This document shows positions 70-61,445 of a DNA stretch of 64,000 nucleotides, in pieces (within the stretch, counting starts at the first letter, position 1; the number at the start of each line of letters is the position of its first letter). The stretch lies in IMG/VR virus record IMGVR_UViG_3300040801_001224, positions 124,001 to 188,000 of that record. One strand, 5' to 3'. The position numbers and the translations under genes were made by a program. A model generated the notes under the pieces. That model was not told the origin of the DNA. It saw nothing but the letters and a program-made list of their open reading frames with translations, and did not search any database.

Positions 70-457
70 AAGAAATAAGGCGTTCGGATAAGGGCTGGTA
101 TCCCGGAGAACTCACTGGCTGAAGAAGCTATAGACCTCCTTAAGTGCCATTGCGTAAAGCATAAATCAGTTCGCCGTTTTAATTCGATGAAGTAATTTAA
201 TGATACTGTGGACGCCAGTTCGAATCTGGCCATCTCCACCAAATCTATGGGGATGAATTAGGTTTCGACAGGGTATACTGAGAATTATGGAGAATCAGTC
301 AATGCTAAAGGCTGTGAGGATTGGGAGTAACACCTTTAATGGTGCTCGGTCGAAGAAGCAAAAAAATAATTGAAAATGATGAAATTTTCGCATTAGCGGC
401 ATAGACCGTTAACGGGGTTTTACACCGTCTTCCTTGTTATCAAAAGACGGTGTCTTT
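70..457 (+). ncRNA. ssrA: Circularly permuted (two-piece) tmRNA; the 5' boundary is uncertain and the well-supported core is about 192-457
   Basis: T-arm GCCAG-TTCGAAT-CTGGC, then CATCTCC-A-CCA ending at 241; 7-nt spacer; GGGGATG at 249 pairs with CATCTCC, giving the G3:U alanine identity pair; D-loop AATTAGGTTTCGAC; tag ORF; terminal hairpin 422-453. Confidence 0.92.
372..404 (+). other. tmRNA proteolysis tag reading frame (A)ENDEIFALAA*
   Basis: AAATAATT context, then GAA AAT GAT GAA ATT TTC GCA TTA GCG GCA TAG; resembles ANDENYALAA. Confidence 0.9.
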
Positions 458-1096
458 ATGTATGCTATAGTGTTGGCGTAACCCGTTCACTGACTTTTCT
501 TCTCCGCAAATAATACAAGAACATTTTATTCTGCTACTATTATTTTTAGAAATTTTTTCTCTGGTAGTTTTGGATAATTTTCTTCCCTTCCCTTGCCCAG
601 TGCGATCTATGTTTCTTATCTTCGGGTCATGCATTGGGTTGTTGTTTTTTAATCGTTCCGAAGCTTGCCGGCGTTGTTCGTTAGTCCATTCGTACCCTCC
701 ACCACCTGGTCTAGATACTCCTTTATTTGACTCAGATATTTTTCTTTTGTGTTCTTCAGAAAAAGATCGTCCAGTATTGGCCTGACTTATTGTTTTTTTG
801 TGTTCGTCAGATATTACCCTCGGTCCACCATCTGTTCCGTTTTCTATAGCAAGATTTGCCCATTCTTTTGATTCTACGATTTGGTTTAGCTTTGAAAAAA
901 GTGTAGAAAATCTTTTTAGCTTTTCTAAGCTTTTGAATTCCTTATACCACAAGGTATCGATAAATTTGCCGTGTTTCTTGATGTGACGTAACCAGTATTT
1001 GCCCGATCCGGCATATTTAGTCGGCTCATTTTTTGTCTTGCCGAAATATTTGAGCCCGGTTTTCTGGTGCTGTTTTATATATAGATAAATACTCAT
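440..1096 (-). CDS. Free-standing GIY-YIG homing endonuclease with NUMOD3 repeats
   Basis: IYLYIKQH...LKYFGKT...YAGSGKYW; repeated SEEHKRKISES; AGGAG RBS places the start at 1096 rather than 1138. Confidence 0.85.
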   Translation of the reverse strand: MSIYLYIKQHQKTGLKYFGKTKNEPTKYAGSGKYWLRHIKKHGKFIDTLWYKEFKSLEKLKRFSTLFSKLNQIVESKEWANLAIENGTDGGPRVISDEHKKTISQANTGRSFSEEHKRKISESNKGVSRPGGGGYEWTNEQRRQASERLKNNNPMHDPKIRNIDRTGQGKGRKLSKTTREKISKNNSSRIKCSCIICGEEKSVNGLRQHYSIHKDTVF

Positions 1097-1592: not shown

Positions 1593-2045
1593 ATGAGACT
1601 CAATGAATTAAAGGGCCAAACAATTCACCAAAAAGTAGACAATTTTATAACATCTGTTAGTGAACAGTATGGCACATCATGGTTATTTGACACACACGTA
1701 TCTAATAGAATGTGGACACGTGGTGATGGCAAACGTTATAAAGAATTATCGAGAATTACGTCATTTTTCAATACTGACCAAATAAAGACCAGAGCGCCTA
1801 AAGATTTAAAGGATCTACCAGATGAAATACAAGATACGCCGGGTGTTATAGACTTACTTTGGAAAGAAATCGAATCTAAAGGCAAGCACGTAGGTCAGTT
1901 GTCAGACGAGTTTCCAAGTATCCCACGTGGTGATTGCTATGTATTAGATAAGGTGTTATATGTACGTAGAGGTGGTATAGACATCATACAGTATGGTTCA
2001 CTTGGACGCCTTAAAAATTCTGAAGTTTGGAATACTAAAAAATGA
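1593..2045 (+). CDS. Putative head-internal protein (MRLNEL tag)
   Basis: Late promoter at 1531; shared N-terminal motif. Confidence 0.7.
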   Translation: MRLNELKGQTIHQKVDNFITSVSEQYGTSWLFDTHVSNRMWTRGDGKRYKELSRITSFFNTDQIKTRAPKDLKDLPDEIQDTPGVIDLLWKEIESKGKHVGQLSDEFPSIPRGDCYVLDKVLYVRRGGIDIIQYGSLGRLKNSEVWNTKK

Positions 2046-3145
2046 GGCTATTTGAACTAACAAATCCACCAGCTAAAACTAAGACTATTACATTCACCTT
2101 TGGTAGAATGAATCCGCCCACGGTAGGTCACGGTAAGTTAATTCAAAAAGTAATGGACGTTGCGGGCGGTGAAGAATTTGTTATCATCCCAACAAAGACT
2201 CAAGACAAGAAAAAGAACCCATTATCATTTGAACAAAAAGTTCACTTCCTTAATGAAATGTTTCCATTAGTTGAAGGTCACATTGCTTTAGACTCAAACA
2301 TTAAAACTGTATTTGACGCAATGAAATCATTTGATGCGGCAGGTGTTAAGCAAGTGACGATGGTTGTAGGTGATGATCGTGTAGCACAGTTTGATAAACT
2401 ACTAAATAGCTACAACGGTAAAGAATACAACTTTGACGCCATCAACATTGTGTCAGCAGGACAACGTGATCCAGACAGTGATGGCGTAGAAGGTATGTCA
2501 GCATCTAAAATGCGTGAAGCGGCTGTTAACGATGATTACGAAACATTCCAACAAGGCTTACCACAAGGCTTCGACGGACAGGAAATGTTCCAGGCAGTAA
2601 AGCAAGGCATGGGACTTACGGAAGGATATAAGGAAGAACCAACGCCACCGAAAGGCGGTAGAACAGGCCCGACAAACTCCACTGTTGCCAAACGTCAAAT
2701 GGCATATAAAGATGGCAAACTATCTAAAGGCTCCGGCTTAACGAAAGGCTGGACTCCTGAAGCAAAAGCTGAAAAAGCCGGATACCCACCTTCAAGCCCA
2801 CTGTATAAATATTTCTTACAAGGATTAAATGAAGCAGAAGAACATTGTAAAACATGTGGTGGCGAAGGCGTTGTATATTGGGATTATGACGATCCTGAAG
2901 TAGGCACTACAGTCAAAGCAACGGCACCATGCCCAGCTTGCTCTGTTACGGAAGCTAAAAAGCCAGTAAAATTAACAAAGCGTGAAAAAGACGCAATTGC
3001 CGACTGTAAGCGTCATGGCGTACCACTGCCTAGCTGGTTACATGACAAAGTAAAATCATTAGAAGAAGACGCAGACAACAAAGAAGCAGACCAGTATCGC
3101 AACTGGGGTCTTAAAGGAAAATTCATCTATTCCGGTTGGGGCTAA
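2042..3145 (+). CDS. HxGH-class cytidylyl/adenylyltransferase-like protein with appended small modules
   Basis: FGRMNPPTVGH, VVGDDR, SAGQRDPD, MSASKMR; MRLFEL N-terminus; CxxC..CPxC module near the C-terminus. Confidence 0.85.
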   Translation: MRLFELTNPPAKTKTITFTFGRMNPPTVGHGKLIQKVMDVAGGEEFVIIPTKTQDKKKNPLSFEQKVHFLNEMFPLVEGHIALDSNIKTVFDAMKSFDAAGVKQVTMVVGDDRVAQFDKLLNSYNGKEYNFDAINIVSAGQRDPDSDGVEGMSASKMREAAVNDDYETFQQGLPQGFDGQEMFQAVKQGMGLTEGYKEEPTPPKGGRTGPTNSTVAKRQMAYKDGKLSKGSGLTKGWTPEAKAEKAGYPPSSPLYKYFLQGLNEAEEHCKTCGGEGVVYWDYDDPEVGTTVKATAPCPACSVTEAKKPVKLTKREKDAIADCKRHGVPLPSWLHDKVKSLEEDADNKEADQYRNWGLKGKFIYSGWG

Positions 3146-34681: not shown

Positions 34682-34710
34682 TTGACAAATAGCTCATACT
34701 CCTGTATAAT
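34682..34710 (+). promoter_or_regulatory. sigma70 promoter inside an RBS-sequestering inverted repeat
   Basis: TTGACA-17-TATAAT; CTCATACTCC/GGAGTATGAG. Confidence 0.85.
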
Positions 34711-34727
34711 AACAAAATATATGGAGT

Positions 34728-35768
34728 ATGAGTTTGGTTACAGAACAAGAAATAGCTGACAGAATACACAGGGAAGTACTAGGGCTACTAGGTCCACTCA
34801 AATCAGTACCTTCAGGTTGGCAAAAGCAAAATTGTAAATTATGTCATCATCGCGGTCATGGACATGACAAGCGTGAACGATTCGGTGTGATTAGACATAA
34901 CGATGGCTCTGTAGTTGTGAATTGCTTTAACTGTGGCTTCAGCAGTAGTTGGACACCAGGCAAAACCCTATCTAAGTCTTTTAAATGGTTTTTAGAAACA
35001 ATTGGCATGAGCAAGTATGATGTCAAACGTTTAGACTTTGAGTTATATAAGCTACGTAACAACATGAAGACTGGCTCCACTCTAAAGATGTCACGTGATG
35101 TCACAAAGGAATGGAAAGAAGTTGAGCTACCCAAAGGTTCTAAGACTATTAGGGAATGGGCTGAAGAAGGCTGTACAGACGAAAACTTTTTAGGTGTAGT
35201 ACAGTACCTAGTTGACAGGGACTTGCTCTATCCTGACACGTTCTATTGGACACCTAAAGACTTAATGTATAAGAACAGAGCTACCTATCCATTTATATAT
35301 GATGGCAAGATAGTAGGTTATACTGGACGTTATGTTAAAGAAATAAAAGACAAGAAGATGCCCAAGTATCACGCTGAAACACCAGAAAGCTTTTTAACTA
35401 ACCTGGATAGACAAAAGCGTGAAGACAAGAAGTTTGTAATACTTACGGAAGGTGTGTTTGACGCACATGTTGTAGATGGTGTTGCCGTTCTTGGAAATAA
35501 CCTAACTGCTGACCAGATAAGTATTATTGAACGACTAGGTAAAGAAATCATTGTAGTGCCTGACAAAGACAAAGACGGGCAATTATTATTTGACACAGCT
35601 ATAGAACATGGCTGGACAATTAGTACGCCAGACTGGGGGGCAGGTGTTAAAGACCCAGCAGGTGCTGTAGAAAAATATGGACGTATTTTAACAGTACAGA
35701 GCATTATTGAATCAAGGGACAAGAACGCCTTTGCGGCAAAACTCAAAAGGAAATTGGATAAGTTTTAA
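34728..35768 (+). CDS. DNA primase (gp61-like)
   Basis: Zn finger CKLC..CFNC; TOPRIM LTEGVFDA, VPDKDKDG, KDP. Confidence 0.93.
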   Translation: MSLVTEQEIADRIHREVLGLLGPLKSVPSGWQKQNCKLCHHRGHGHDKRERFGVIRHNDGSVVVNCFNCGFSSSWTPGKTLSKSFKWFLETIGMSKYDVKRLDFELYKLRNNMKTGSTLKMSRDVTKEWKEVELPKGSKTIREWAEEGCTDENFLGVVQYLVDRDLLYPDTFYWTPKDLMYKNRATYPFIYDGKIVGYTGRYVKEIKDKKMPKYHAETPESFLTNLDRQKREDKKFVILTEGVFDAHVVDGVAVLGNNLTADQISIIERLGKEIIVVPDKDKDGQLLFDTAIEHGWTISTPDWGAGVKDPAGAVEKYGRILTVQSIIESRDKNAFAAKLKRKLDKF

Positions 35769-37168
35769 TGGCTGAAATAACAGAATATACACAAGAGATT
35801 GAAAATCTATTTATTGACTTTTTATTTAATGATCCAGAACTATATGTGAGATGTAAGGGCATTATTGACCCACACTTCTTTGAGTCTAACAAGAACTCAG
35901 ACACGATCAAGTTTATGAACCAACATTATTTGGATCATTCGGATTTGCCTACACGTGAGCAGATAAAATCTGTAGTAGGTAAAGATATTAACGAGTTAGA
36001 AAAGATGCACGACAGTCATAGAGACTGGTTCCTTGATGAGTTTGAAACTTTCTGTCGTCACAAAGGACTGGAACATGAGATTCTACAGTCTACGACCTTG
36101 CTTGAAAAGAAGCGTTATGGTGAAGTAGAAGATAGAATTAAGAAAGCAGTACAGATTGGTCTAGTAAAGGACTTGGGCACAAATTACTTTGACAAGCCAC
36201 ATGAACGTCTAGAAGATTTACGTGATAACAGTAACCTTGTAAGCACAGGCTGGAAAGACATTGACCGAAAGCTTTATGGTGGTTTTGAGAAAGGCGGCTT
36301 AAATATATTTGCAGGACAGTCAGGATCAGGTAAGTCATTATTCTTACAGAATTTAGCCATTAACTGGGCGCAAGCAGGTATGAATGTTGTTTACATATCC
36401 TTAGAATTAAGTGAAAAGCTATGTAGTATGCGACTAGACGCAATGATTTCAAATTACGCTACAAACGAAGTATTAAAGAATATTGATGATGTATCTATGA
36501 GAGTGGGAACCTTTAAGAAAAAGTTTAAAGGCAACATGGTTATTAAGCAAATGCCAAACGGTTGTACCGCAAACGATATTAGAGCGTATATTAAAGAATT
36601 AGAAATACAATCAGGAAACAGAGTAGACGCAATATTGCTTGATTACCTAGATCTTTGTATGCCAATGAGCGTTAAGGTTAGCCCAAGTGACATGTTTGTC
36701 AAGGACAAGTACGTATCAGAAGAATTACGTAACCTAGCAATGGACTTGGATATTATGTTCTGTACTGCTTCGCAGTTAAACAGAGCGTCACACGAAGAAA
36801 TAGAATTTGATCACTCACATATCTCAGGCGGTATATCTAAAATTAATACCGCTGATAACGTGATGGGTATTTTCGTAACACCTACTATGAAAGAAAACGG
36901 ACGTTATCAAATACAGTTCTTAAAGACTCGTAGTTCTAGTGGTGTGGGCAGTAAGGTAGACTTGAAGTTCAACGTTAAGAGCTTACGTATTGAAGATTTA
37001 GATGAGGATGAAGCATCAGCAACAGAAGTATCGACAGCTAGTATGATTGATCAACTAAAAAAGAAATCTGTGTTAAACAACAAAACAGAGTCGGAAAAAG
37101 TTGAAGATTCAGGTGATGATGTGCTACAGGCGTCGGCAGATCTCAGAGCTCTTCTAAAACGTAAATAG
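35768..37168 (+). CDS. Replicative DnaB-like helicase (gp41-like)
   Basis: AGQSGSGKS, YISLELSE, LDYLDL, TASQLNR, KTRSS. Confidence 0.95.
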   Translation: MAEITEYTQEIENLFIDFLFNDPELYVRCKGIIDPHFFESNKNSDTIKFMNQHYLDHSDLPTREQIKSVVGKDINELEKMHDSHRDWFLDEFETFCRHKGLEHEILQSTTLLEKKRYGEVEDRIKKAVQIGLVKDLGTNYFDKPHERLEDLRDNSNLVSTGWKDIDRKLYGGFEKGGLNIFAGQSGSGKSLFLQNLAINWAQAGMNVVYISLELSEKLCSMRLDAMISNYATNEVLKNIDDVSMRVGTFKKKFKGNMVIKQMPNGCTANDIRAYIKELEIQSGNRVDAILLDYLDLCMPMSVKVSPSDMFVKDKYVSEELRNLAMDLDIMFCTASQLNRASHEEIEFDHSHISGGISKINTADNVMGIFVTPTMKENGRYQIQFLKTRSSSGVGSKVDLKFNVKSLRIEDLDEDEASATEVSTASMIDQLKKKSVLNNKTESEKVEDSGDDVLQASADLRALLKRK

Positions 37169-37216
37169 ATTACCATTTATTTGATAAATACACTAAAGCA
37201 TTAAAGGGAGTCTGTT

Positions 37217-37465
37217 GTGACACGTAAGAGTTTATTTGAAGAATTAAATGAATTGGCGCCTGTTTCTACTAGGGAAGTGGTTTTAGAAAGCCGAGCAACT
37301 CATGCCATTTCATCAATAATTAATTTATTCGAATATATTGAAGATAACTTTGCCGAAGAAGAAGCTATAAATTTACAACGTAGATTGATCAGCAGTATCA
37401 AAGGCAAAGATCCAAAACGTTTTTCACGTGCTTTAGCTAAGATCACCAAAGGCGACACAGAGTAA
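37217..37465 (+). CDS. Small conserved late protein
   Basis: GTG start with GGGAG RBS; late promoter at 37183. Confidence 0.7.
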   Translation: MTRKSLFEELNELAPVSTREVVLESRATHAISSIINLFEYIEDNFAEEEAINLQRRLISSIKGKDPKRFSRALAKITKGDTE

Positions 37466-38925
37466 TGAGGCTAGACCAAATCCGCCCGCTTAAAGAACGA
37501 GCAGGCGGTATCACACACATCGAAGATTTGGCCATTGATGAGCTAATATCAGCACTTAGAAATTTTGAAGAATATGAAATTTCAGAAAAAATTGATGGAT
37601 CAAACCTACAATTCGGATACGACGGTGACGGGTTTTATACTAGTCGTGAGTCGAAAGCCGGAGATGAAAGAATGCGCTCTGTGGACGACTATCCAATACA
37701 ATACAGCACCACATTTCAAAGATCAGCACACCTAGCACTAGAAAAAGTTATGCCACTCATCATACGTAGTGAATTTTTTACTACTGGTGACGCAGTTGAA
37801 GTTGAAGTATTATTTGGTAAGCTACCGAACGCTGTGCCATATAACGACGATGCGAACCGCATCATATTCTTACGCCCCATATCAGGAAACCCAGACATTG
37901 AGGGGTTAAGCGATCTATTGGAAGGGCAACGAATTCGAGTTGAAGTAGATGCGCCATTCAGTTTAAATGGCAAAACTATGGATATTCGTCCAGAACGTCA
38001 TGTTTGGGAATTTGCCCAGACGCCAACAGTTAATGGTAATGAAGTTGTCAAGGGTGAAGCCAAACAGGAACTAGAATCCAAACTAGATGAAATAGAGACA
38101 TTTTTGAAACAGCCGAGTGGCATTGGTGGTTTCAGTAATGCTGAAGCTATTTCATTGCCGTTGAATAAGCGTCCGGAAGGAATCAGTACTTCTGAATGGA
38201 AAGAAGCAAAAGAAGCGATAAAGTCACTACGTAAGAAATTTTACGATGTTTCTGATGATGGAACTCCTACTGGATTCAAGCAGGATATCAAGGAGTTTCT
38301 ATTAAAGCGTTTAGTTAGGACTATAGGCAGTGCCTTTGGCCCAGAAGTTTCAGACGGTGGCTGGATTGAGGGTGTCGTGTTCCGTCACAAAGACACTAAC
38401 CAAATGTTTAAGGTTGTTGATAAGGATATGTTTACTGCCGTTAAGAAATTCATATGGAAAGTTAGAGATGAGTTAAGTGAAAAGCCAAAAAGTGTCAACA
38501 CCATTAGCTCCTTTATGGGTAAGGTCCTAGTGGGATTGGGGACGTCACTTGGTATCCCCGAGTTAGGAACTTTCCAGGCTAAACGAGCACTCAAAAAACA
38601 CGGCAGTACACGGGAAGAAATACTGTCAAATCTCAGTAAGGAAATAGACTTTGACAACACTAAATCTTATTGGGAAAAATTTATCACTGATCAACAAGAG
38701 AAGTTTAACAAAGAGTTAGATAAATACATAAAAGGCAGAAAAGACCTGTCATTCACCGCAAACGATCGAACGTTTAAATATGACGATGAAGTCCATGCTA
38801 GAACACTTCAAGTATTTGAGAGTGTTAATAGAATACTAAAAGGCTTTTTAGAAAATACTAGAAAAGCCAAGTCGGCAGAAGACCTAATAATGCTATTGGT
38901 TGGTCGACAATTACAGGACATATAA
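37465..38925 (+). CDS. ATP-dependent RNA-ligase-superfamily nucleotidyltransferase with MRLDQI tag
   Basis: Motif I EKIDGSN, motif III EVEVLF, motif IV EGVVFR, motif V FKVVDK. Confidence 0.75.
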   Translation: MRLDQIRPLKERAGGITHIEDLAIDELISALRNFEEYEISEKIDGSNLQFGYDGDGFYTSRESKAGDERMRSVDDYPIQYSTTFQRSAHLALEKVMPLIIRSEFFTTGDAVEVEVLFGKLPNAVPYNDDANRIIFLRPISGNPDIEGLSDLLEGQRIRVEVDAPFSLNGKTMDIRPERHVWEFAQTPTVNGNEVVKGEAKQELESKLDEIETFLKQPSGIGGFSNAEAISLPLNKRPEGISTSEWKEAKEAIKSLRKKFYDVSDDGTPTGFKQDIKEFLLKRLVRTIGSAFGPEVSDGGWIEGVVFRHKDTNQMFKVVDKDMFTAVKKFIWKVRDELSEKPKSVNTISSFMGKVLVGLGTSLGIPELGTFQAKRALKKHGSTREEILSNLSKEIDFDNTKSYWEKFITDQQEKFNKELDKYIKGRKDLSFTANDRTFKYDDEVHARTLQVFESVNRILKGFLENTRKAKSAEDLIMLLVGRQLQDI

Positions 38926-38927
38926 TA

Positions 38928-40019
38928 ATGAACTTAAGAGAACAGTTTGACAAATTTAAATTAGATGAAAGGGCATTGAGTGATATGTCTACTTATCGAC
39001 AAGCCATGTCTATTTTAAATCAGCGAGCCAAAGCTGGTGATTCTCAAGCAATCTCTCTTAAAAACAAAGTTCTTAAAATGATTGGCGATAAGGGCATCTC
39101 ACACAAATCTGTTATTGGCATGATGAACACTCTTCCGCAGTTTACCCTTAAAGAAGGCGGCAATGCTGTAGAAGGTGTTGGCCCAATAAACCAAGAAAAT
39201 GTCGAAGCTACCATGGCAGTAATCTATAAAGAATTATTGCCGGCGCTAGGATTGTCCAAATCAGACACAGCATCATTGGGTAGTACAGGAAAGAAAGGTC
39301 CTGGCCAGCAGAGCGGTGATATTGATCTTGCGGTTAGTGTTCAGGCATTGACCAAAAACAATAATATCGAAACGCCAGCAGACTTATATACATTCATCGA
39401 GCAAACACTTCAAAAGTTTACTGATAGAACTAGAATCATGGGTGGAATTGGCATTGTCACTTGTGCGTGGCCAATCAGTAACACCGACGGCAAGCAGGAA
39501 GGTGAATTTGTCCAGTTGGATATAATGACTGTTGACAGTGTTGATTGGGCTCGTTGGGCATTCTTTGCGCCATCATTTGATCAGTCACCATATAAAGGAT
39601 TGTATAGGAACGAAATACTATATGCGATTGCTCGGTATATGGATTATGAGTCGTTAGAAACAGCACTAGATAAAGAAGGCGTTGAGGTAGATGCTCGTTG
39701 GAAACGTAAGTTTTATGACTTAGGAAAAGGCATCTTATCAGGCGAGCAGTCACGTATGGGCAAGAAGGGAATTGTTAAGACAGTTAAAACACTGAATAAA
39801 GAAATATTGTCTCAGAATCCAGAAGAAGCTGTGACAATGTTTTTCGGCCCAGACTTCAAGCCAAATGATATGTTGACGTGGGAGCAAGCCTTTGCCGCAA
39901 TTATGGACAGCGATTTCATACATGCTGATCATAGACAAGAAATATTGCAGATGACAAAGCAGGGTATACTCAATAAAGGCTACCCTATTCCACCAGAACT
40001 AGATGAGGTGACAGCATGA
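38928..40019 (+). CDS. Pol-beta-superfamily nucleotidyltransferase
   Basis: LGSTGKK...SGDIDLAV (GS...DxD) and third Asp in VQLDIM; domain begins at LKE|GGNA. Confidence 0.78.
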   Translation: MNLREQFDKFKLDERALSDMSTYRQAMSILNQRAKAGDSQAISLKNKVLKMIGDKGISHKSVIGMMNTLPQFTLKEGGNAVEGVGPINQENVEATMAVIYKELLPALGLSKSDTASLGSTGKKGPGQQSGDIDLAVSVQALTKNNNIETPADLYTFIEQTLQKFTDRTRIMGGIGIVTCAWPISNTDGKQEGEFVQLDIMTVDSVDWARWAFFAPSFDQSPYKGLYRNEILYAIARYMDYESLETALDKEGVEVDARWKRKFYDLGKGILSGEQSRMGKKGIVKTVKTLNKEILSQNPEEAVTMFFGPDFKPNDMLTWEQAFAAIMDSDFIHADHRQEILQMTKQGILNKGYPIPPELDEVTA

Positions 40020-40603
40020 GACTAGATGAAATAGCACAAACGCCAGTAGAAGAAACGGCGGGTGACTTAGTAAGACCAGAAGATGAAAGAATGGGTGATG
40101 ACAAAACAACACACCTAGTCTATGATGATGGCGACTTTAAAGTATGGTGGACACCTGCCAAAGATATGTTTGAGATTACAGAAATGCAGGAAGATGGCTG
40201 GGTAGAAGGCCGGTTTAAAGCTAAAGCGTTTAGTGTAACAAAAGCAGAACAAATCGCTGAAAAGTACATGACGACAAAATGGTACGAAGGCATTGACGAA
40301 AGCGTTACAGAAGAAGCAAATGAGTTAAACATTGAAGTCCACCAAACAGATCAGTGGACTGACGAAGGCAACCCAGAATATTATGAGCCAGATGTAGAAA
40401 ATACACAATACGAAGTAAATATTGGTGGCGAATTAGTGGGTGAAATGACATACGACAATTACTTTGGCTACTTAGCTGGTAACATTGGCAATCGCACGGT
40501 GCAACTGGAAATGAGATACGAAGAATCTGCTGAAGATTGTGTTAAGCGTTATTTCGCAACACCAACAGGTCAAAAGCATCTTAAAGTAATGGGATTCGCA
40601 TAA
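40016..40603 (+). CDS. Putative head-internal modular protein (MRLDEI tag)
   Basis: Two modules separated by IDE|SVTEE|. Confidence 0.65.
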   Translation: MRLDEIAQTPVEETAGDLVRPEDERMGDDKTTHLVYDDGDFKVWWTPAKDMFEITEMQEDGWVEGRFKAKAFSVTKAEQIAEKYMTTKWYEGIDESVTEEANELNIEVHQTDQWTDEGNPEYYEPDVENTQYEVNIGGELVGEMTYDNYFGYLAGNIGNRTVQLEMRYEESAEDCVKRYFATPTGQKHLKVMGFA

Positions 40604-60215: not shown

Positions 60216-61445
60216 ATGCCAACAAAAGACATTCATTGTTCTTTTTGCTCGCAATCCAGACATCAAGTCAAAAAGATGATTGAAGGCCCTGTAATTAAAG
60301 GTGTTCAGATTTATATTTGTGACGAATGTGTTGACGCAAGCCATTCAGCAATTCACGGAAGCATATCTGTTAAGCGTGAAAAGAAAATACCAACATTTAC
60401 CCCCAGTGAAATACACTCACATTTGGATGATTATGTAGTAGGACAGGATGACGCCAAGCGTACTTTGTCAGTAGCCATCTATAACCACTATAAGCGTATT
60501 AATGATTTAATTGAGGGTGACGTCGAGACTGAATTACAGAAGTCCAATGTTTTGATTATCGGTCCGTCAGGCACTGGCAAAACGTTACTTGCTTCAAGTG
60601 TGGCACGTATTATGAATTTACCATTTGCTATTGGTGATGCCACAACGCTAACGGAGTCAGGTTATGTGGGTGATGATGTAGAAAAGTTAGTTGAGCGTTT
60701 ACTTCAATCAGCAGATGGCGACGTAGAAGCGGCAGAGCGTGGCATTATATTTATTGACGAGATTGACAAGAAGTCACGCAAAGGCGCCAGCGCAAGCGTT
60801 AAGGACGTATCTGGTGAAGGCGTACAGCAAGCACTATTAAAGTTAGTGGAAGGCACGACAGTTAAGGTACGTTACCAGCATGATTCATATGATATCGACA
60901 CAAGTAACATACTGTTTGTTATTGGTGGTGCGTTTGTGGGACTTAGTGAAATCGTTAAGAAGTCACAGCAAGGAAAGAGCTCAATGGGTTTCGGTGCTGA
61001 GATTAAAGATGCTGAAAAAGACAGCGAACTATTTAAACTGGCGTCACCAGATGATTTGACTAAATATGGGCTAATACCAGAATTTGTGGGACGTTTCCCA
61101 GTGACAGTAGCTTTGGATAGTTTAAGCGAAGAAACGATGGTGAGGATCCTAAAGGAGCCAAAACACAGCATTATTCAGCAGTATCAACGACTGTTTCAGA
61201 TTGATGGTGTCACCCTTACCTTTGCTGATAAATACATTGAGAATATAGCCAAGCAAGGATTTAAGCAGAAAACTGGAGCTCGTGGACTGAGAGCTATTAT
61301 AGAGAAAGACCTAGCAGATATCCAGTTTAACTTGCCTGACTTGGCTAAAGAAGGATTTAAGCACGTATTAGTGCAGGACGACGGAACAATAAAACAAACA
61401 AAACGGAAGCCAAGAACCCAAAACAAGGAGAGAGCGAATGGGTAA
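60216..61445 (+). CDS. clpX: ClpX ATPase/unfoldase
   Basis: CSFC..ICDEC Zn domain, GPSGTGKT, GYVGDDV, IFIDEIDK, DVSGEGVQQ, MGF loop, TGARGLR. Confidence 0.95.
   Translation: MPTKDIHCSFCSQSRHQVKKMIEGPVIKGVQIYICDECVDASHSAIHGSISVKREKKIPTFTPSEIHSHLDDYVVGQDDAKRTLSVAIYNHYKRINDLIEGDVETELQKSNVLIIGPSGTGKTLLASSVARIMNLPFAIGDATTLTESGYVGDDVEKLVERLLQSADGDVEAAERGIIFIDEIDKKSRKGASASVKDVSGEGVQQALLKLVEGTTVKVRYQHDSYDIDTSNILFVIGGAFVGLSEIVKKSQQGKSSMGFGAEIKDAEKDSELFKLASPDDLTKYGLIPEFVGRFPVTVALDSLSEETMVRILKEPKHSIIQQYQRLFQIDGVTLTFADKYIENIAKQGFKQKTGARGLRAIIEKDLADIQFNLPDLAKEGFKHVLVQDDGTIKQTKRKPRTQNKERANG

What the first reader, a model, noticed from the sequence alone, without database searches (positions are those of the whole stretch)
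37465..40019. Adjacent late-expressed RNA-ligase-like and Pol-beta nucleotidyltransferase genes: candidate injected RNA-repair or nucleotide-signalling module
Seen: a KxDG/EGxV/K ligase-superfamily protein with a long helical C-terminus lies 2 nt before a GS-x-DxD..D NTase. Both are tagged and follow a late promoter, far from the DNA replication operons. Known: Rnl-type ligases seal broken tRNAs; Pol-beta NTases include CCA-adding enzymes, CD-NTases and AMPylating toxins and antitoxins. Inference: a two-enzyme unit, perhaps three with the HxGH enzyme at 2042, that heals tRNA or tmRNA ends, caps RNA or ejected DNA, or makes a decoy nucleotide signal at infection onset.
Basis: partly seen in the sequence, partly recalled or inferred. 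Interest (0 to 1): 0.72.

Follow-up and report, generated by a model that had tools for sequence, protein, structure and literature searches.

The report
Phage fill-and-seal nucleic-acid repair pair
Two adjacent genes of a 328-kb jumbo phage encode an RNA-ligase-type sealing enzyme and an unannotated polymerase-X-like nucleotide-adding enzyme; in hundreds of other phages these are neighbours or fused, so they probably refill and rejoin broken RNA (or DNA) during infection.

Summary
The sequence observation holds. ORF A (37465-38925, 486 aa) has intact ligase motifs I, III, IV and V, an RNA-ligase-like fold, a helical C-terminal domain and no OB domain. ORF B (38928-40019, 363 aa) starts 2 nt after A's stop and has an invariant GS...DxD...D.

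B is not a generic Pol-beta NTase. Its model matches the palm plus thumb of family X DNA polymerases (Z about 10). It belongs to a large, virus-only family without a Pfam model (about 1,600 clusters).

A-type or other RNA-ligase-type genes are fused to B, or lie next to it, in 23 of 41 dereplicated loci. Triple fusions add an HxGH (HIGH) nucleotidyltransferase.

Two claims fail. The genes are not far from replication genes; they directly follow primase and DnaB helicase. Late expression is unproven.

Best reading: a fill-and-seal end-repair module, a non-orthologous counterpart of RlaP plus RNA ligase. The substrate is probably RNA/tRNA (about 0.45). Ribo-patch DNA repair is a serious rival (about 0.3). 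The B homologue in phage PA5oct is recorded as a virion protein, which partly supports the "injected" idea. Cyclic-nucleotide signalling and capping are not supported. Novelty: a new variant of a known kind.

The parts
37465..38925 (+). ORF A, 486 aa: covalent nucleotidyltransferase of RNA-ligase type. It has an adenylyltransferase domain (about residues 12-330) and an all-helical C-terminal domain (320-485). There is no OB domain.
   Evidence: ORF. Pfam RNA_ligase PF09414 E=1.2e-4, 22.7 bits, below the 27-bit cut-off. 58 of 81 homologues hit PF09414. AlphaFold pLDDT 93. Best structural matches are RNA ligases: NgrRnl Z 9.3, T4 Rnl2 8.6, Trl1 8.0, REL1 7.8, T4 Rnl1 7.8; DNA ligases reach 7.0 at most. 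Viral structural relatives are named RNA ligases, none DNA ligases.
37588..37599 (+). Motif I, K42-I-D44-G45; K42 is the predicted AMP-accepting lysine.
   Evidence: K42, D44 and G45 are invariant in 81 homologues.
37804..37806 (+). Motif III glutamate, E114.
   Evidence: Invariant.
38368..38424 (+). Motif IV (E302-G303-V-V305) and motif V (K316...K320).
   Evidence: E302, G303, V305, K316 and D319 are invariant; K320 is at least 90% conserved.
38928..40019 (+). ORF B, 363 aa: Pol-beta-fold nucleotidyltransferase with a family-X-polymerase-like palm and thumb (residues about 75-330). It has a 65-residue helical N-terminal extension that most ~300-aa homologues lack.
   Evidence: ORF. No Pfam, PHROG or NCBIfam hit. 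AlphaFold pLDDT 90. VIA: Tth PolX Z 10.4, Pol beta palm-thumb 10.0, ASFV PolX 9.8 (166 of 176 residues), TdT 9.8, Pol lambda 9.3; TUTases and CD-NTases match the palm only, Z 8.5 or less. Foldseek PDB and Swiss-Prot top hits are Pol beta and Pol lambda. ESM Atlas places it in virus-only unnamed clusters.
39279..39326 (+). NTase signature G118-S119 ... D131-I-D133 (metal-binding carboxylates).
   Evidence: G118, D131 and D133 are invariant; S119 is at least 90% conserved.
39519..39521 (+). Third catalytic carboxylate, D198, in the VQLD motif.
   Evidence: Q196 and D198 are invariant.
39594..39611 (+). Conserved K223-G224-x-x-R227-N228 at the start of the first thumb helix. It is a candidate contact with the primer terminus or the nascent nucleotide.
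   Evidence: At least 90% conserved. The helix starts at residue 224 in the model. The functional role is inferred.
37183..37191 (+). GATAAATAC motif, resembling the T4 late promoter TATAAATA. It lies upstream of the small ORF-A-B run.
   Evidence: the 8-mer ATAAATAC occurs 16 times against 4.7 expected. The timing it implies is an inference from the T4 consensus (my own knowledge).
37217..37465 (+). Small ORF, 82 aa, always found between the helicase and A in related contigs.
   Evidence: phrog_11854 'virion structural protein', E=1.6e-21. Synteny.
34682..37168 (+). Context: a perfect sigma-70 promoter (34682-34710), DnaG-type primase (34728-35768) and DnaB-type helicase (35768-37168) directly upstream.
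2042..3145 (+). HIGH-type (T-x-G-H) nucleotidyltransferase, 367 aa, tagged MRLFEL. It is a candidate third component. It is not adjacent here, but homologous domains are fused to B and to the ligase in other phages.
   Evidence: Pfam CTP_transf_like E=4.4e-5. phrog_3041 and phrog_395 'cytidyltransferase'. Weak NMNAT-like hits far below cut-off. Fusions.
40016..40603 (+). Downstream ORF, 195 aa, with an MRLDEI tag. Its N-terminus resembles PA5oct gp230, a virion protein.

Best explanation
A and B form a two-enzyme 'fill-and-seal' module for broken polynucleotide ends.

Proposed mechanism:
- B, a minimal Pol-X-like nucleotidyltransferase, adds one or a few nucleotides to a 3'-OH end. It uses the two-metal site formed by D131, D133 and D198.
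- A, an RNA-ligase-type enzyme, self-adenylylates on K42, transfers AMP to a 5'-phosphate end, and joins that end to the 3'-OH.
- The most likely substrate is RNA of the translation apparatus, above all tRNAs that host nucleases have cut and trimmed.
- On this reading the pair is a non-orthologous counterpart of the RlaP + RNA ligase repair pairs of other phages and bacteria, and serves as a counter-defence.
- In other phages a HIGH-type adenylyltransferase (NMNAT-like) is fused on as a third activity. Its role is open.

Shown: the folds, the conserved catalytic residues, the gene linkage and the fusions.
Inferred: the activities, their order, and the substrate.

The confidence of 0.45 is for the full statement with RNA as substrate. 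The fill-and-seal mechanism alone, whatever the substrate, I put at about 0.8.
For: 1. Catalytic motifs are intact and invariant in both families.
2. A is of RNA-ligase type. Its nearest structures are Rnl5, Rnl2, Trl1, REL1 and Rnl1; it has a helical C-terminal domain and no OB fold. 58 of 81 homologues hit PF09414.
3. Rosetta-stone evidence:
   - A+B fusions.
   - B fused in either order to three different RNA-ligase-type domains: A-type, short PF09414-type and DUF6267.
   - Of 41 dereplicated B loci, 4 are fused to such a ligase, 19 are adjacent to one, and 5 lie within 8 kb of one.
   - Of 80 A loci, 38 have B fused or adjacent, and 8 more have B nearby.
4. B is never found paired with a PF01068 or PF01653 DNA ligase. 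All 11 other complete genomes checked nonetheless carry one elsewhere.
5. Three B-family proteins also carry CCA-adding-enzyme domains. One of them additionally has a PNK-like kinase and an HD domain.
6. There is a published precedent. RlaP Pol-beta NTases sit beside RNA ligases, add 1-2 nt to RNA 3'-OH ends, and restore function to over-trimmed tRNA (PMC12776372; PMC7824862).
7. RlaP above its cut-off was found only in RsoM2USA, which lacks B. It was found in none of the B-bearing genomes tested.
8. The phage invests in translation: 26 tRNA genes and a tmRNA.
Against: - B's closest folds are DNA polymerases of family X, matching the thumb as well as the palm. They are not RNA-specific NTases.
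- The pair sits inside a conserved primase-helicase block. Where no ligase is nearby, B can directly follow DnaB, or follow primase plus a PD-(D/E)XK exonuclease.
- No PNK-type kinase (AAA_33), CCA-adding enzyme or KptA was found in this genome, and most relatives lack the kinase and KptA too. Classical 2',3'-cyclic-phosphate/5'-OH tRNA breaks could therefore not be healed by phage enzymes alone.
- The PA5oct B homologue is recorded in virions. That location suits a DNA-bound role at least as well.
- This genome, unlike its relatives, has no canonical DNA ligase.
- No activity has been measured for any member of either family.
Confidence: 0.45

Rival explanations
1. DNA end, nick or gap repair by a ribo-patch route, like bacterial LigD. 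B fills short gaps or extends DNA 3' ends, possibly with ribonucleotides. The RNA-ligase-type A then seals the resulting nick between a 3'-ribonucleotide and a 5'-phosphate DNA end. The target would be the phage's own genome: nicks or ends at ejection, damage from host nucleases, or replication intermediates.
For: - Pol X palm plus thumb fold, Z about 10; ASFV Pol X is covered almost end to end. Pol beta and Pol lambda are the top hits in PDB and Swiss-Prot.
- Some related clusters hit the Pol X palm model PF14792.
- Conserved position after primase and DnaB.
- A PD-(D/E)XK exonuclease is adjacent or fused in some lineages.
- A PNK-type kinase is absent from most of these genomes.
- The PA5oct B homologue is virion-associated.
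- This genome has no other ligase.
- From my own knowledge: Rnl2- and Rnl5-type ligases seal nicks whose 3'-OH strand is RNA, and LigD couples ribonucleotide addition to ligation.
Against: - The ligase partners lack the OB domain found in all known DNA ligases.
- Canonical DNA ligases coexist elsewhere in all 11 other complete genomes checked.
- Fusions to a tRNA-specific CCA-adding enzyme.
- B shows no recognisable 8-kDa lyase domain or helix-hairpin-helix Pfam hit.
Confidence: 0.3
2. Okazaki-fragment maturation. B fills the gaps left after primer removal, and A is this phage's replicative nick-sealing ligase.
For: - The genes directly follow primase and helicase.
- No PF01068 or PF01653 ligase, and no homologue of the relatives' DNA ligases, occurs in this 328-kb genome.
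Against: - All 11 other complete genomes with an A-like or short ligase also encode a canonical DNA ligase. The family is therefore not the replicative ligase in general.
- A has an RNA-ligase fold without an OB domain.
- The host LigA could serve this phage.
Confidence: 0.07
3. Nucleotide signalling, a decoy signal, or capping, as the first reader also proposed. B would make cyclic or linear oligonucleotide signals, or A would cap RNA or DNA ends.
For: B shares the Pol-beta palm with CD-NTases and OAS. A shares KxDG chemistry with capping enzymes.
Against: - CD-NTase and OAS matches cover only the palm (about 100 residues, Z 7.2 or less). Pol X matches cover palm plus thumb.
- A has no OB domain, and no capping enzyme is among its 50 listed PDB matches.
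- Consistent pairing with a polynucleotide ligase is not expected of a signal synthase.
Confidence: 0.05
4. Largely structural, or otherwise non-catalytic, virion proteins that merely retain ancestral folds.
For: - The PA5oct B homologue is annotated as a structural protein.
- The neighbouring genes are virion proteins.
Against: Every catalytic residue is invariant across families that diverge down to about 30% identity, including in the PA5oct virion homologue.
Confidence: 0.03

Closest known systems
[quoted passage not shown]
   Same: A Pol-beta-fold NTase is genetically coupled to an RNA ligase. The proposed logic is to add back lost nucleotides to a 3'-OH end and then seal. Such pairs are common in jumbo phages.
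   Different: B is not an RlaP. It has no PF10127 hit, and hhalign against the RsoM2USA RlaP finds nothing. B has a Pol-X-type thumb, whereas PfRlaP is described with a helical C-terminal domain (PMC12776372). The distributions look complementary in the few genomes tested.
Family X DNA polymerases, especially the minimal ASFV Pol X, which works with the ASFV ligase in base-excision repair
   Same: Palm plus thumb architecture, a GS...DxD...D active site, small size, and a partner ligase encoded by the same virus.
   Different: No sequence-level Pol X signature in this protein (no PF14792 or PF14791 hit). An extra four-strand beta-sheet at residues 241-295. The partner is an RNA-ligase-type enzyme without an OB domain. 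The substrate is unknown.
Bacterial LigD (NHEJ), in which ligase, polymerase and phosphoesterase are fused
   Same: Polymerase and ligase lie in one polypeptide or operon. A ribonucleotide-patch logic is possible.
   Different: The LigD polymerase is a primase-polymerase (AEP), not a Pol-beta fold. Its ligase is a canonical OB-containing DNA ligase.
ATP-dependent RNA ligases: Rnl5 (NgrRnl/DraRnl), T4 Rnl2, the fungal Trl1 ligase domain, T4 Rnl1, and trypanosome REL1 (which works with the TUTase RET2)
   Same: The adenylyltransferase fold and motifs I, III, IV and V. A non-OB accessory domain. Trl1 and Rnl1 also carry helical C-terminal domains.
   Different: About 10-17% identity. There is a roughly 190-residue elaboration between motifs III and IV. 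The C-terminal domain is not superimposable as a whole. Pfam scores the window's protein below the PF09414 cut-off.
Pfam DUF6267 (PF19782), an uncharacterised phage family
   Same: It also carries KxDG and EGxV, with an N-terminal HIED-like box before motif I. It is also fused to B.
   Different: A does not score against PF19782. Only one distant A relative does so weakly.

Membership tests
Covalent nucleotidyltransferase superfamily (ligases and capping enzymes), for A | Motif I KxDG lysine nucleophile, with motifs III, IV and V | tested here: met
   K42, D44, G45, E114, E302, G303, V305 and K316 are invariant in 81 homologues.
Covalent nucleotidyltransferase superfamily, for A | Adenylyltransferase fold | tested here: met
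   The pLDDT-93 model aligns with 160-230 residues of RNA and DNA ligase NTase domains, Z 6.6-9.3.
ATP-dependent RNA ligase (Pfam RNA_ligase, PF09414), for A | Score above the Pfam gathering threshold | tested here: inconclusive
   The window's protein scores 22.7 bits against a 27-bit cut-off. 58 of 81 homologues match at E of 0.01 or better, best 3.6e-6. Short partner ligases of other phages pass the threshold, at 31.4 bits.
ATP-dependent RNA ligase, for A | RNA sealing activity and lysyl-AMP formation | not testable with these tools
   Needs biochemistry.
DNA ligase (ATP- or NAD-dependent), for A | NTase domain followed by an OB domain; PF01068 or PF01653 signature | tested here: not met
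   No OB domain; the C-terminus is helical. There is no PF01068 or PF01653 match anywhere in the genome. DNA ligases rank below RNA ligases structurally.
mRNA capping enzyme (GTase), for A | KxDG NTase domain plus a C-terminal OB domain | tested here: not met
   No OB domain. No capping enzyme is among the 50 listed PDB matches. One appears only at rank 36 in the viral library.
Pol-beta nucleotidyltransferase superfamily, for B | hG[GS]-x(9-13)-DxD plus a third carboxylate, on the Pol-beta palm | tested here: met
   G118, S119, D131, D133 and D198 are conserved. The palm aligns with dozens of NTases.
Family X DNA polymerase, for B | Palm plus thumb subdomain arrangement | tested here: met
   Pol X enzymes align over model residues about 75-328 (164-186 residues, Z 9.3-10.4). 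Other NTases align only over 88-212. Swiss-Prot hits run Pol beta 109-335.
Family X DNA polymerase, for B | Sequence signatures PF14792, PF14791 and PF10391; the 8-kDa dRP-lyase domain; helix-hairpin-helix motifs | tested here: not met
   No Pfam hit for B, and none of these models is hit by its 79 homologues. Only a minority of members of related Atlas clusters hit PF14792. The N-terminal helices align only loosely with the Pol beta fingers.
Family X DNA polymerase, for B | Template-directed DNA synthesis | not testable with these tools
   Needs primer-extension assays.
RlaP (PF10127), for B | PF10127 sequence signature | tested here: not met
   No hit for B or for any of its 79 homologues. 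hhalign against the RsoM2USA RlaP gives probability 0.2.
RlaP (PF10127), for B | Genomic association with RNA ligase genes | tested here: met
CD-NTase / cGAS-DncV-like, for B | Pol-beta palm plus the CD-NTase helical C-terminal lobe; CBASS effector neighbourhood | tested here: not met
   Only the palm aligns (Z 7.2 or less, about 100 residues). The neighbours are a ligase, a helicase and virion genes.
CCA-adding enzyme / poly(A) polymerase (PF01743), for B | PolyA_pol head domain | tested here: not met
   No PF01743 hit in B or anywhere in the genome. In fusions, the CCA enzyme is a separate domain beside B.

The most novel reading that the evidence does not exclude
B is the founding member of a phage-specific branch of family X polymerases. 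It is carried in the virion, as its PA5oct homologue is, and works with an OB-less RNA-type ligase. A HIGH adenylyltransferase that supplies or recycles the ligase's nucleotide cofactor may also take part. Together they would patch and seal the incoming phage genome, or host-inflicted nicks, with ribonucleotides. This would be a viral, Pol-X-based analogue of LigD-type end repair acting at the moment of infection.
Probability: 0.2. Interest if true: 0.8.

Novelty: new variant of a known kind. Interest (0 to 1): 0.6.

Why it matters
- **Scale.** B's family is large: 1,605 representative clusters at 50% identity. It is essentially virus-only, has no Pfam, PHROG or NCBIfam model, and is labelled 'hypothetical protein' wherever it is labelled at all.
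- **What the linkage explains.** Seeing B as a Pol-X-like enzyme wired to RNA-ligase-type enzymes, often with a HIGH adenylyltransferase, gives a testable function to thousands of phage genes. It also gives one to Pfam DUF6267.
- **Relation to RlaP.** It shows a second, independent route to the 'add nucleotides, then ligate' repair logic known from RlaP.
- **If the substrate is RNA.** It widens the set of phage counter-measures against tRNA-cutting defences.
- **If the substrate is DNA.** It would be, as far as I know, the first Pol-X-based repair system described in phages, and possibly a virion-delivered one.
- **Possible tools.** Compact terminal or gap-filling transferases and ligases are also potential laboratory reagents.

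Tried and rejected
- **Nucleotide search of the phage collection.** blastn with the whole region found nothing. Only protein-level relatives exist.
- **PDB sequence-profile searches.** Neither family gave a meaningful hit.
- **Complex prediction for A + B.** The job returned 'no answer' (score 0.00). It counts neither for nor against binding.
- **Genes directly after the A homologues in PA5oct (gp229) and RsoM2USA (gp437).** They are not B homologues by BLAST or hhalign. The PA5oct B homologue turned out to lie two genes further on, at gp231.
- **A second ligase in the genome.** The only other ORF with KxDG and EGxV is the large terminase subunit, so this is a chance match.
- **Other healing enzymes in the genome.** Searches for PolyA_pol, AAA_33, DUF6267 and KptA found none.
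- **The 907-aa gene after the B homologue in the Flavobacterium phage.** It is annotated NadR but could not be assigned.
- **C-terminal extensions of distant A relatives (770-1,250 aa).** They have no Pfam hit.
- **Literature.** The PA5oct omics paper gives no per-gene timing for gp228 or gp231 in its main text. Burroughs & Aravind 2016 (the RlaP definition) is not held, and neither are the supplements of the jumbo-phage survey. No paper was found for DUF6267, or for a Pol-X-like enzyme paired with an RNA ligase in phages.
- **Where B lies far from A (G009-G011).** Its neighbours gave no clue.


Full report
**Setting.** The window is bases 124001-188000 of a 328,096-bp IMG/VR phage record with direct terminal repeats, judged complete. 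Nearly all genes are on the + strand. The window mixes virion genes (tail sheath, large terminase, virion proteins) with replication and nucleotide-metabolism genes (two helicases, primase, ribonucleotide reductase). The genome carries 26 tRNA genes and a tmRNA. The nearest cultured relatives at protein level are Pseudomonas phage PA5oct and Ralstonia phage RsoM2USA.

**The observation.**
- ORF A (37465-38925, 486 aa) and ORF B (38928-40019, 363 aa) are real open frames separated by 2 nt.
- A carries KIDG (42-45), E114, EGVV (302-305) and K316/K320.
- B carries G118-S119, D131-x-D133 and D198.
- In alignments of 81 A relatives and 79 B relatives, reaching down to about 30% identity, these residues are invariant or nearly so.
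- The statement that the genes are far from the replication operons is wrong. A DnaG-type primase (34728-35768) and a DnaB-type helicase (35768-37168) lie immediately upstream.
- The order virion protein, primase, helicase, small ORF, A, B recurs in dozens of metagenomic contigs.

**Promoters and the N-terminal tag.**
- The 'late promoter' is a GATAAATAC motif at 37183-37191.
- The 8-mer ATAAATAC is over-represented in the window: 16 copies against 4.7 expected. It resembles the T4 late consensus (my own knowledge).
- A perfect sigma-70 promoter precedes the primase, and no convincing terminator lies between the helicase and A. Timing is therefore open.
- The 'tag' is an N-terminal M-[RK]-[LIV]-x-[EQ]-[LIVF] motif that starts 14 ORFs in the genome, 9 of them in the window.
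- A fits it (MRLDQI). B fits it only loosely.
- The motif recurs on A- and B-family proteins of other phages.

**What A is.**
- The AlphaFold model is confident (pLDDT 93). It shows an adenylyltransferase domain, then about 165 residues of helices, and no OB fold.
- The best structural matches are RNA ligases: NgrRnl/Rnl5 Z 9.3, T4 Rnl2 8.6, the Trl1 ligase domain 8.0 (extending into the helical domain), REL1 7.8 and T4 Rnl1 7.8. DNA ligases reach 7.0 at most.
- In the viral structure library its relatives are the PA5oct homologue, proteins named RNA ligase, and many 'cytidyltransferase-like domain' fusion proteins, including one from cyanophage S-PM2. None is a DNA ligase.
- Pfam RNA_ligase scores the window's protein just below threshold, but it matches 58 of 81 homologues.
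- A is related at its N-terminus to Pfam DUF6267, which also has KxDG and EGxV.

**What B is.**
- No Pfam, PHROG or NCBIfam model matches B.
- The model (pLDDT 90) matches family X DNA polymerases best, and over both palm and thumb: Thermus PolX Z 10.4, the Pol beta palm-thumb fragment 10.0, ASFV Pol X 9.8 (166 of its 176 residues), TdT 9.8 and Pol lambda 9.3.
- TUTases, poly(A) polymerases, CD-NTases, OAS and CCA-adding enzymes align only with the palm, about 100 residues at Z 8.5 or less.
- Foldseek against the PDB and against Swiss-Prot models agrees.
- The ESM Atlas lists Pol lambda and giant-virus Pol X clusters after B's own unnamed, virus-only clusters.
- A profile search of 1.84 billion representatives finds 1,605 clusters.
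- B is not an RlaP. It has no PF10127 signal, no profile similarity to the RsoM2USA RlaP, and a different C-terminal domain from the one described for PfRlaP (PMC12776372).

**Linkage of the two.**
- P0036 (771 aa) is A fused to B. Five of the 80 A loci carry such fusions, 33 have B adjacent, and 8 have B within about 2 kb. The 26 loci without B are all distant A relatives, at 32% identity or less.
- Starting from B, I clustered 80 IMG/VR loci at 80% identity into 41 groups. In 4 groups B is fused to a KxDG ligase gene, in 19 it is adjacent on either side, and in 5 it lies within 8 kb.
- The partner is of three different RNA-ligase-type lineages: A-type, short PF09414-type of about 300 aa, and DUF6267-type.
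- Among 33 B-family proteins of 430 aa or more:
  - 11 are B + ligase, in either order.
  - 8 are B + ligase + HIGH (CTP_transf_like) NTase, some with NUDIX and extra B copies.
  - 2 are HIGH NTase + CCA-adding enzyme, one of them with a PNK-like kinase and HD domain, + B.
  - 2 are HIGH NTase + B.
- This is strong Rosetta-stone evidence for a shared pathway.
- That enzyme resembles NMN/NaMN adenylyltransferases only weakly.

**RNA or DNA?**

For RNA:
- Every ligase partner is RNA-ligase-like and lacks an OB domain.
- Canonical DNA ligases exist elsewhere in all 11 other complete genomes checked, yet are never the partner.
- Fusions to CCA-adding, kinase and HD domains exist.
- The RlaP-RNA ligase precedent applies. 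RlaP adds 1-2 nt to RNA 3'-OH ends and improves function of an over-trimmed tRNA after ligation (PMC12776372; survey in PMC7824862).
- In the few genomes tested, RlaP and B look complementary.

For DNA:
- B has the Pol X fold.
- The position after primase and helicase persists even where the ligase is absent.
- PD-(D/E)XK exonuclease neighbours or fusions occur.
- A PNK-type kinase and KptA are lacking in this genome and most relatives, and this genome also has no CCA-adding enzyme.
- This genome has no canonical DNA ligase.
- PA5oct EST35_0231, annotated 'structural protein, ESI-MS/MS', is a B homologue with all catalytic residues (hhalign probability 96.9%, E 2e-10).

I therefore commit firmly to the fill-and-seal mechanism (about 0.8). 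I put RNA as substrate at about 0.45, ribo-patch DNA repair at about 0.3, a replicative role at about 0.07, and signalling, capping or purely structural roles at about 0.08 together.

**Comparison and novelty.** In function the pair works like RlaP + Rnl. By membership, A is a divergent RNA-ligase-type enzyme outside the named Rnl families. B is a Pol-X-like branch of the Pol-beta superfamily that fails the sequence definitions of both Pol X and RlaP. I found no paper describing this family or DUF6267, though the searchable library is incomplete. I rate it a new variant of a known kind.

**Limits.**
- No activity is measured.
- Structural matches of Z about 10 show fold, not substrate.
- Co-occurrence counts come from metagenomic contigs of related phages and are not phylogenetically independent.
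- Virion association is known only for the PA5oct homologue of B, and only from a database annotation.

Noticed in passing
window starts 1593, 2042, 6902, 11323, 37465, 40016, 43549, 43779, 46581; also 5 further ORF starts and one internal site elsewhere in the genome: An N-terminal motif M-[RK]-[LIV]-x-[EQ]-[LIVF] (MRLDEI, MRLNEL, MRLFEL, MKISEI and similar) starts 14 ORFs of unrelated sequence. It also starts many A- and B-family proteins of other phages. It resembles the T4 prohead-protease and capsid-targeting L/I-x-E motif (my own knowledge). PA5oct gp230 (MRLDEI) is a virion protein, while gp228 (MNIAEI) was not detected in virions.
   Followed up: partly
L001:8579-9292 (PA5oct EST35_0231): A protein annotated only as 'structural protein (ESI-MS/MS)' is a Pol-X-like NTase of the B family with an intact GS/DxD/D site. 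A nucleotidyltransferase therefore appears to be packaged in PA5oct virions.
   Followed up: partly
whole genome G000: No ATP- or NAD-dependent DNA ligase is detectable in this complete 328-kb genome. All 11 other complete genomes examined have one.
   Followed up: partly
window 37183-37191 and 15 other sites (e.g. 5303, 21049, 33816, 43049): The 8-mer ATAAATAC, a T4-late-promoter-like motif, is enriched 3.4-fold, and 13 of its 16 copies are on the + strand, several of them 20-35 nt before start codons. Separately, TATAAT-type sigma-70 promoters precede other genes. The one at 34682-34710 is a perfect 12/12 match.
   Followed up: partly
window 149-495: A phage-encoded tmRNA with tag peptide ENDEIFALAA.
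   Followed up: no
genome 266270-266347 (outside the window): ARAGORN reports a tRNA with a four-base anticodon (tttg) within the 26-gene tRNA cluster. It is a possible frameshift-suppressor-like tRNA, or a prediction artefact.
   Followed up: no
L068, L070, L079 (414-434 kb phages G003, G004): Arrays of three to four B-family copies, tandem B-B fusions and B-ligase fusions lie side by side. Several matches contain in-frame TAG codons, which hints at TAG recoding in those huge phages.
   Followed up: no
RsoM2USA 129411-132575; G011, G015, G016: RlaP or weak RlaP-like genes lie 2-5 kb from the canonical PF01068 'DNA ligase' of these phages. In PA5oct a 579-aa ORF with a weak P-loop kinase hit sits just upstream of that ligase. 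The 'DNA ligase' may itself belong to a heal-and-seal cluster.
   Followed up: no
window 60216-61445: A ClpX-like ATPase with an N-terminal zinc-finger-like CxxC motif. This could relate to the N-terminal tags.
   Followed up: no
BFVD hit A0A0M6VVW4 (Synechococcus phage S-PM2) and similar: Fusion proteins of an RNA-ligase-like domain with a cytidylyltransferase-like domain are widespread, including in a cultured T4-like cyanophage. They offer an accessible experimental model.
   Followed up: no
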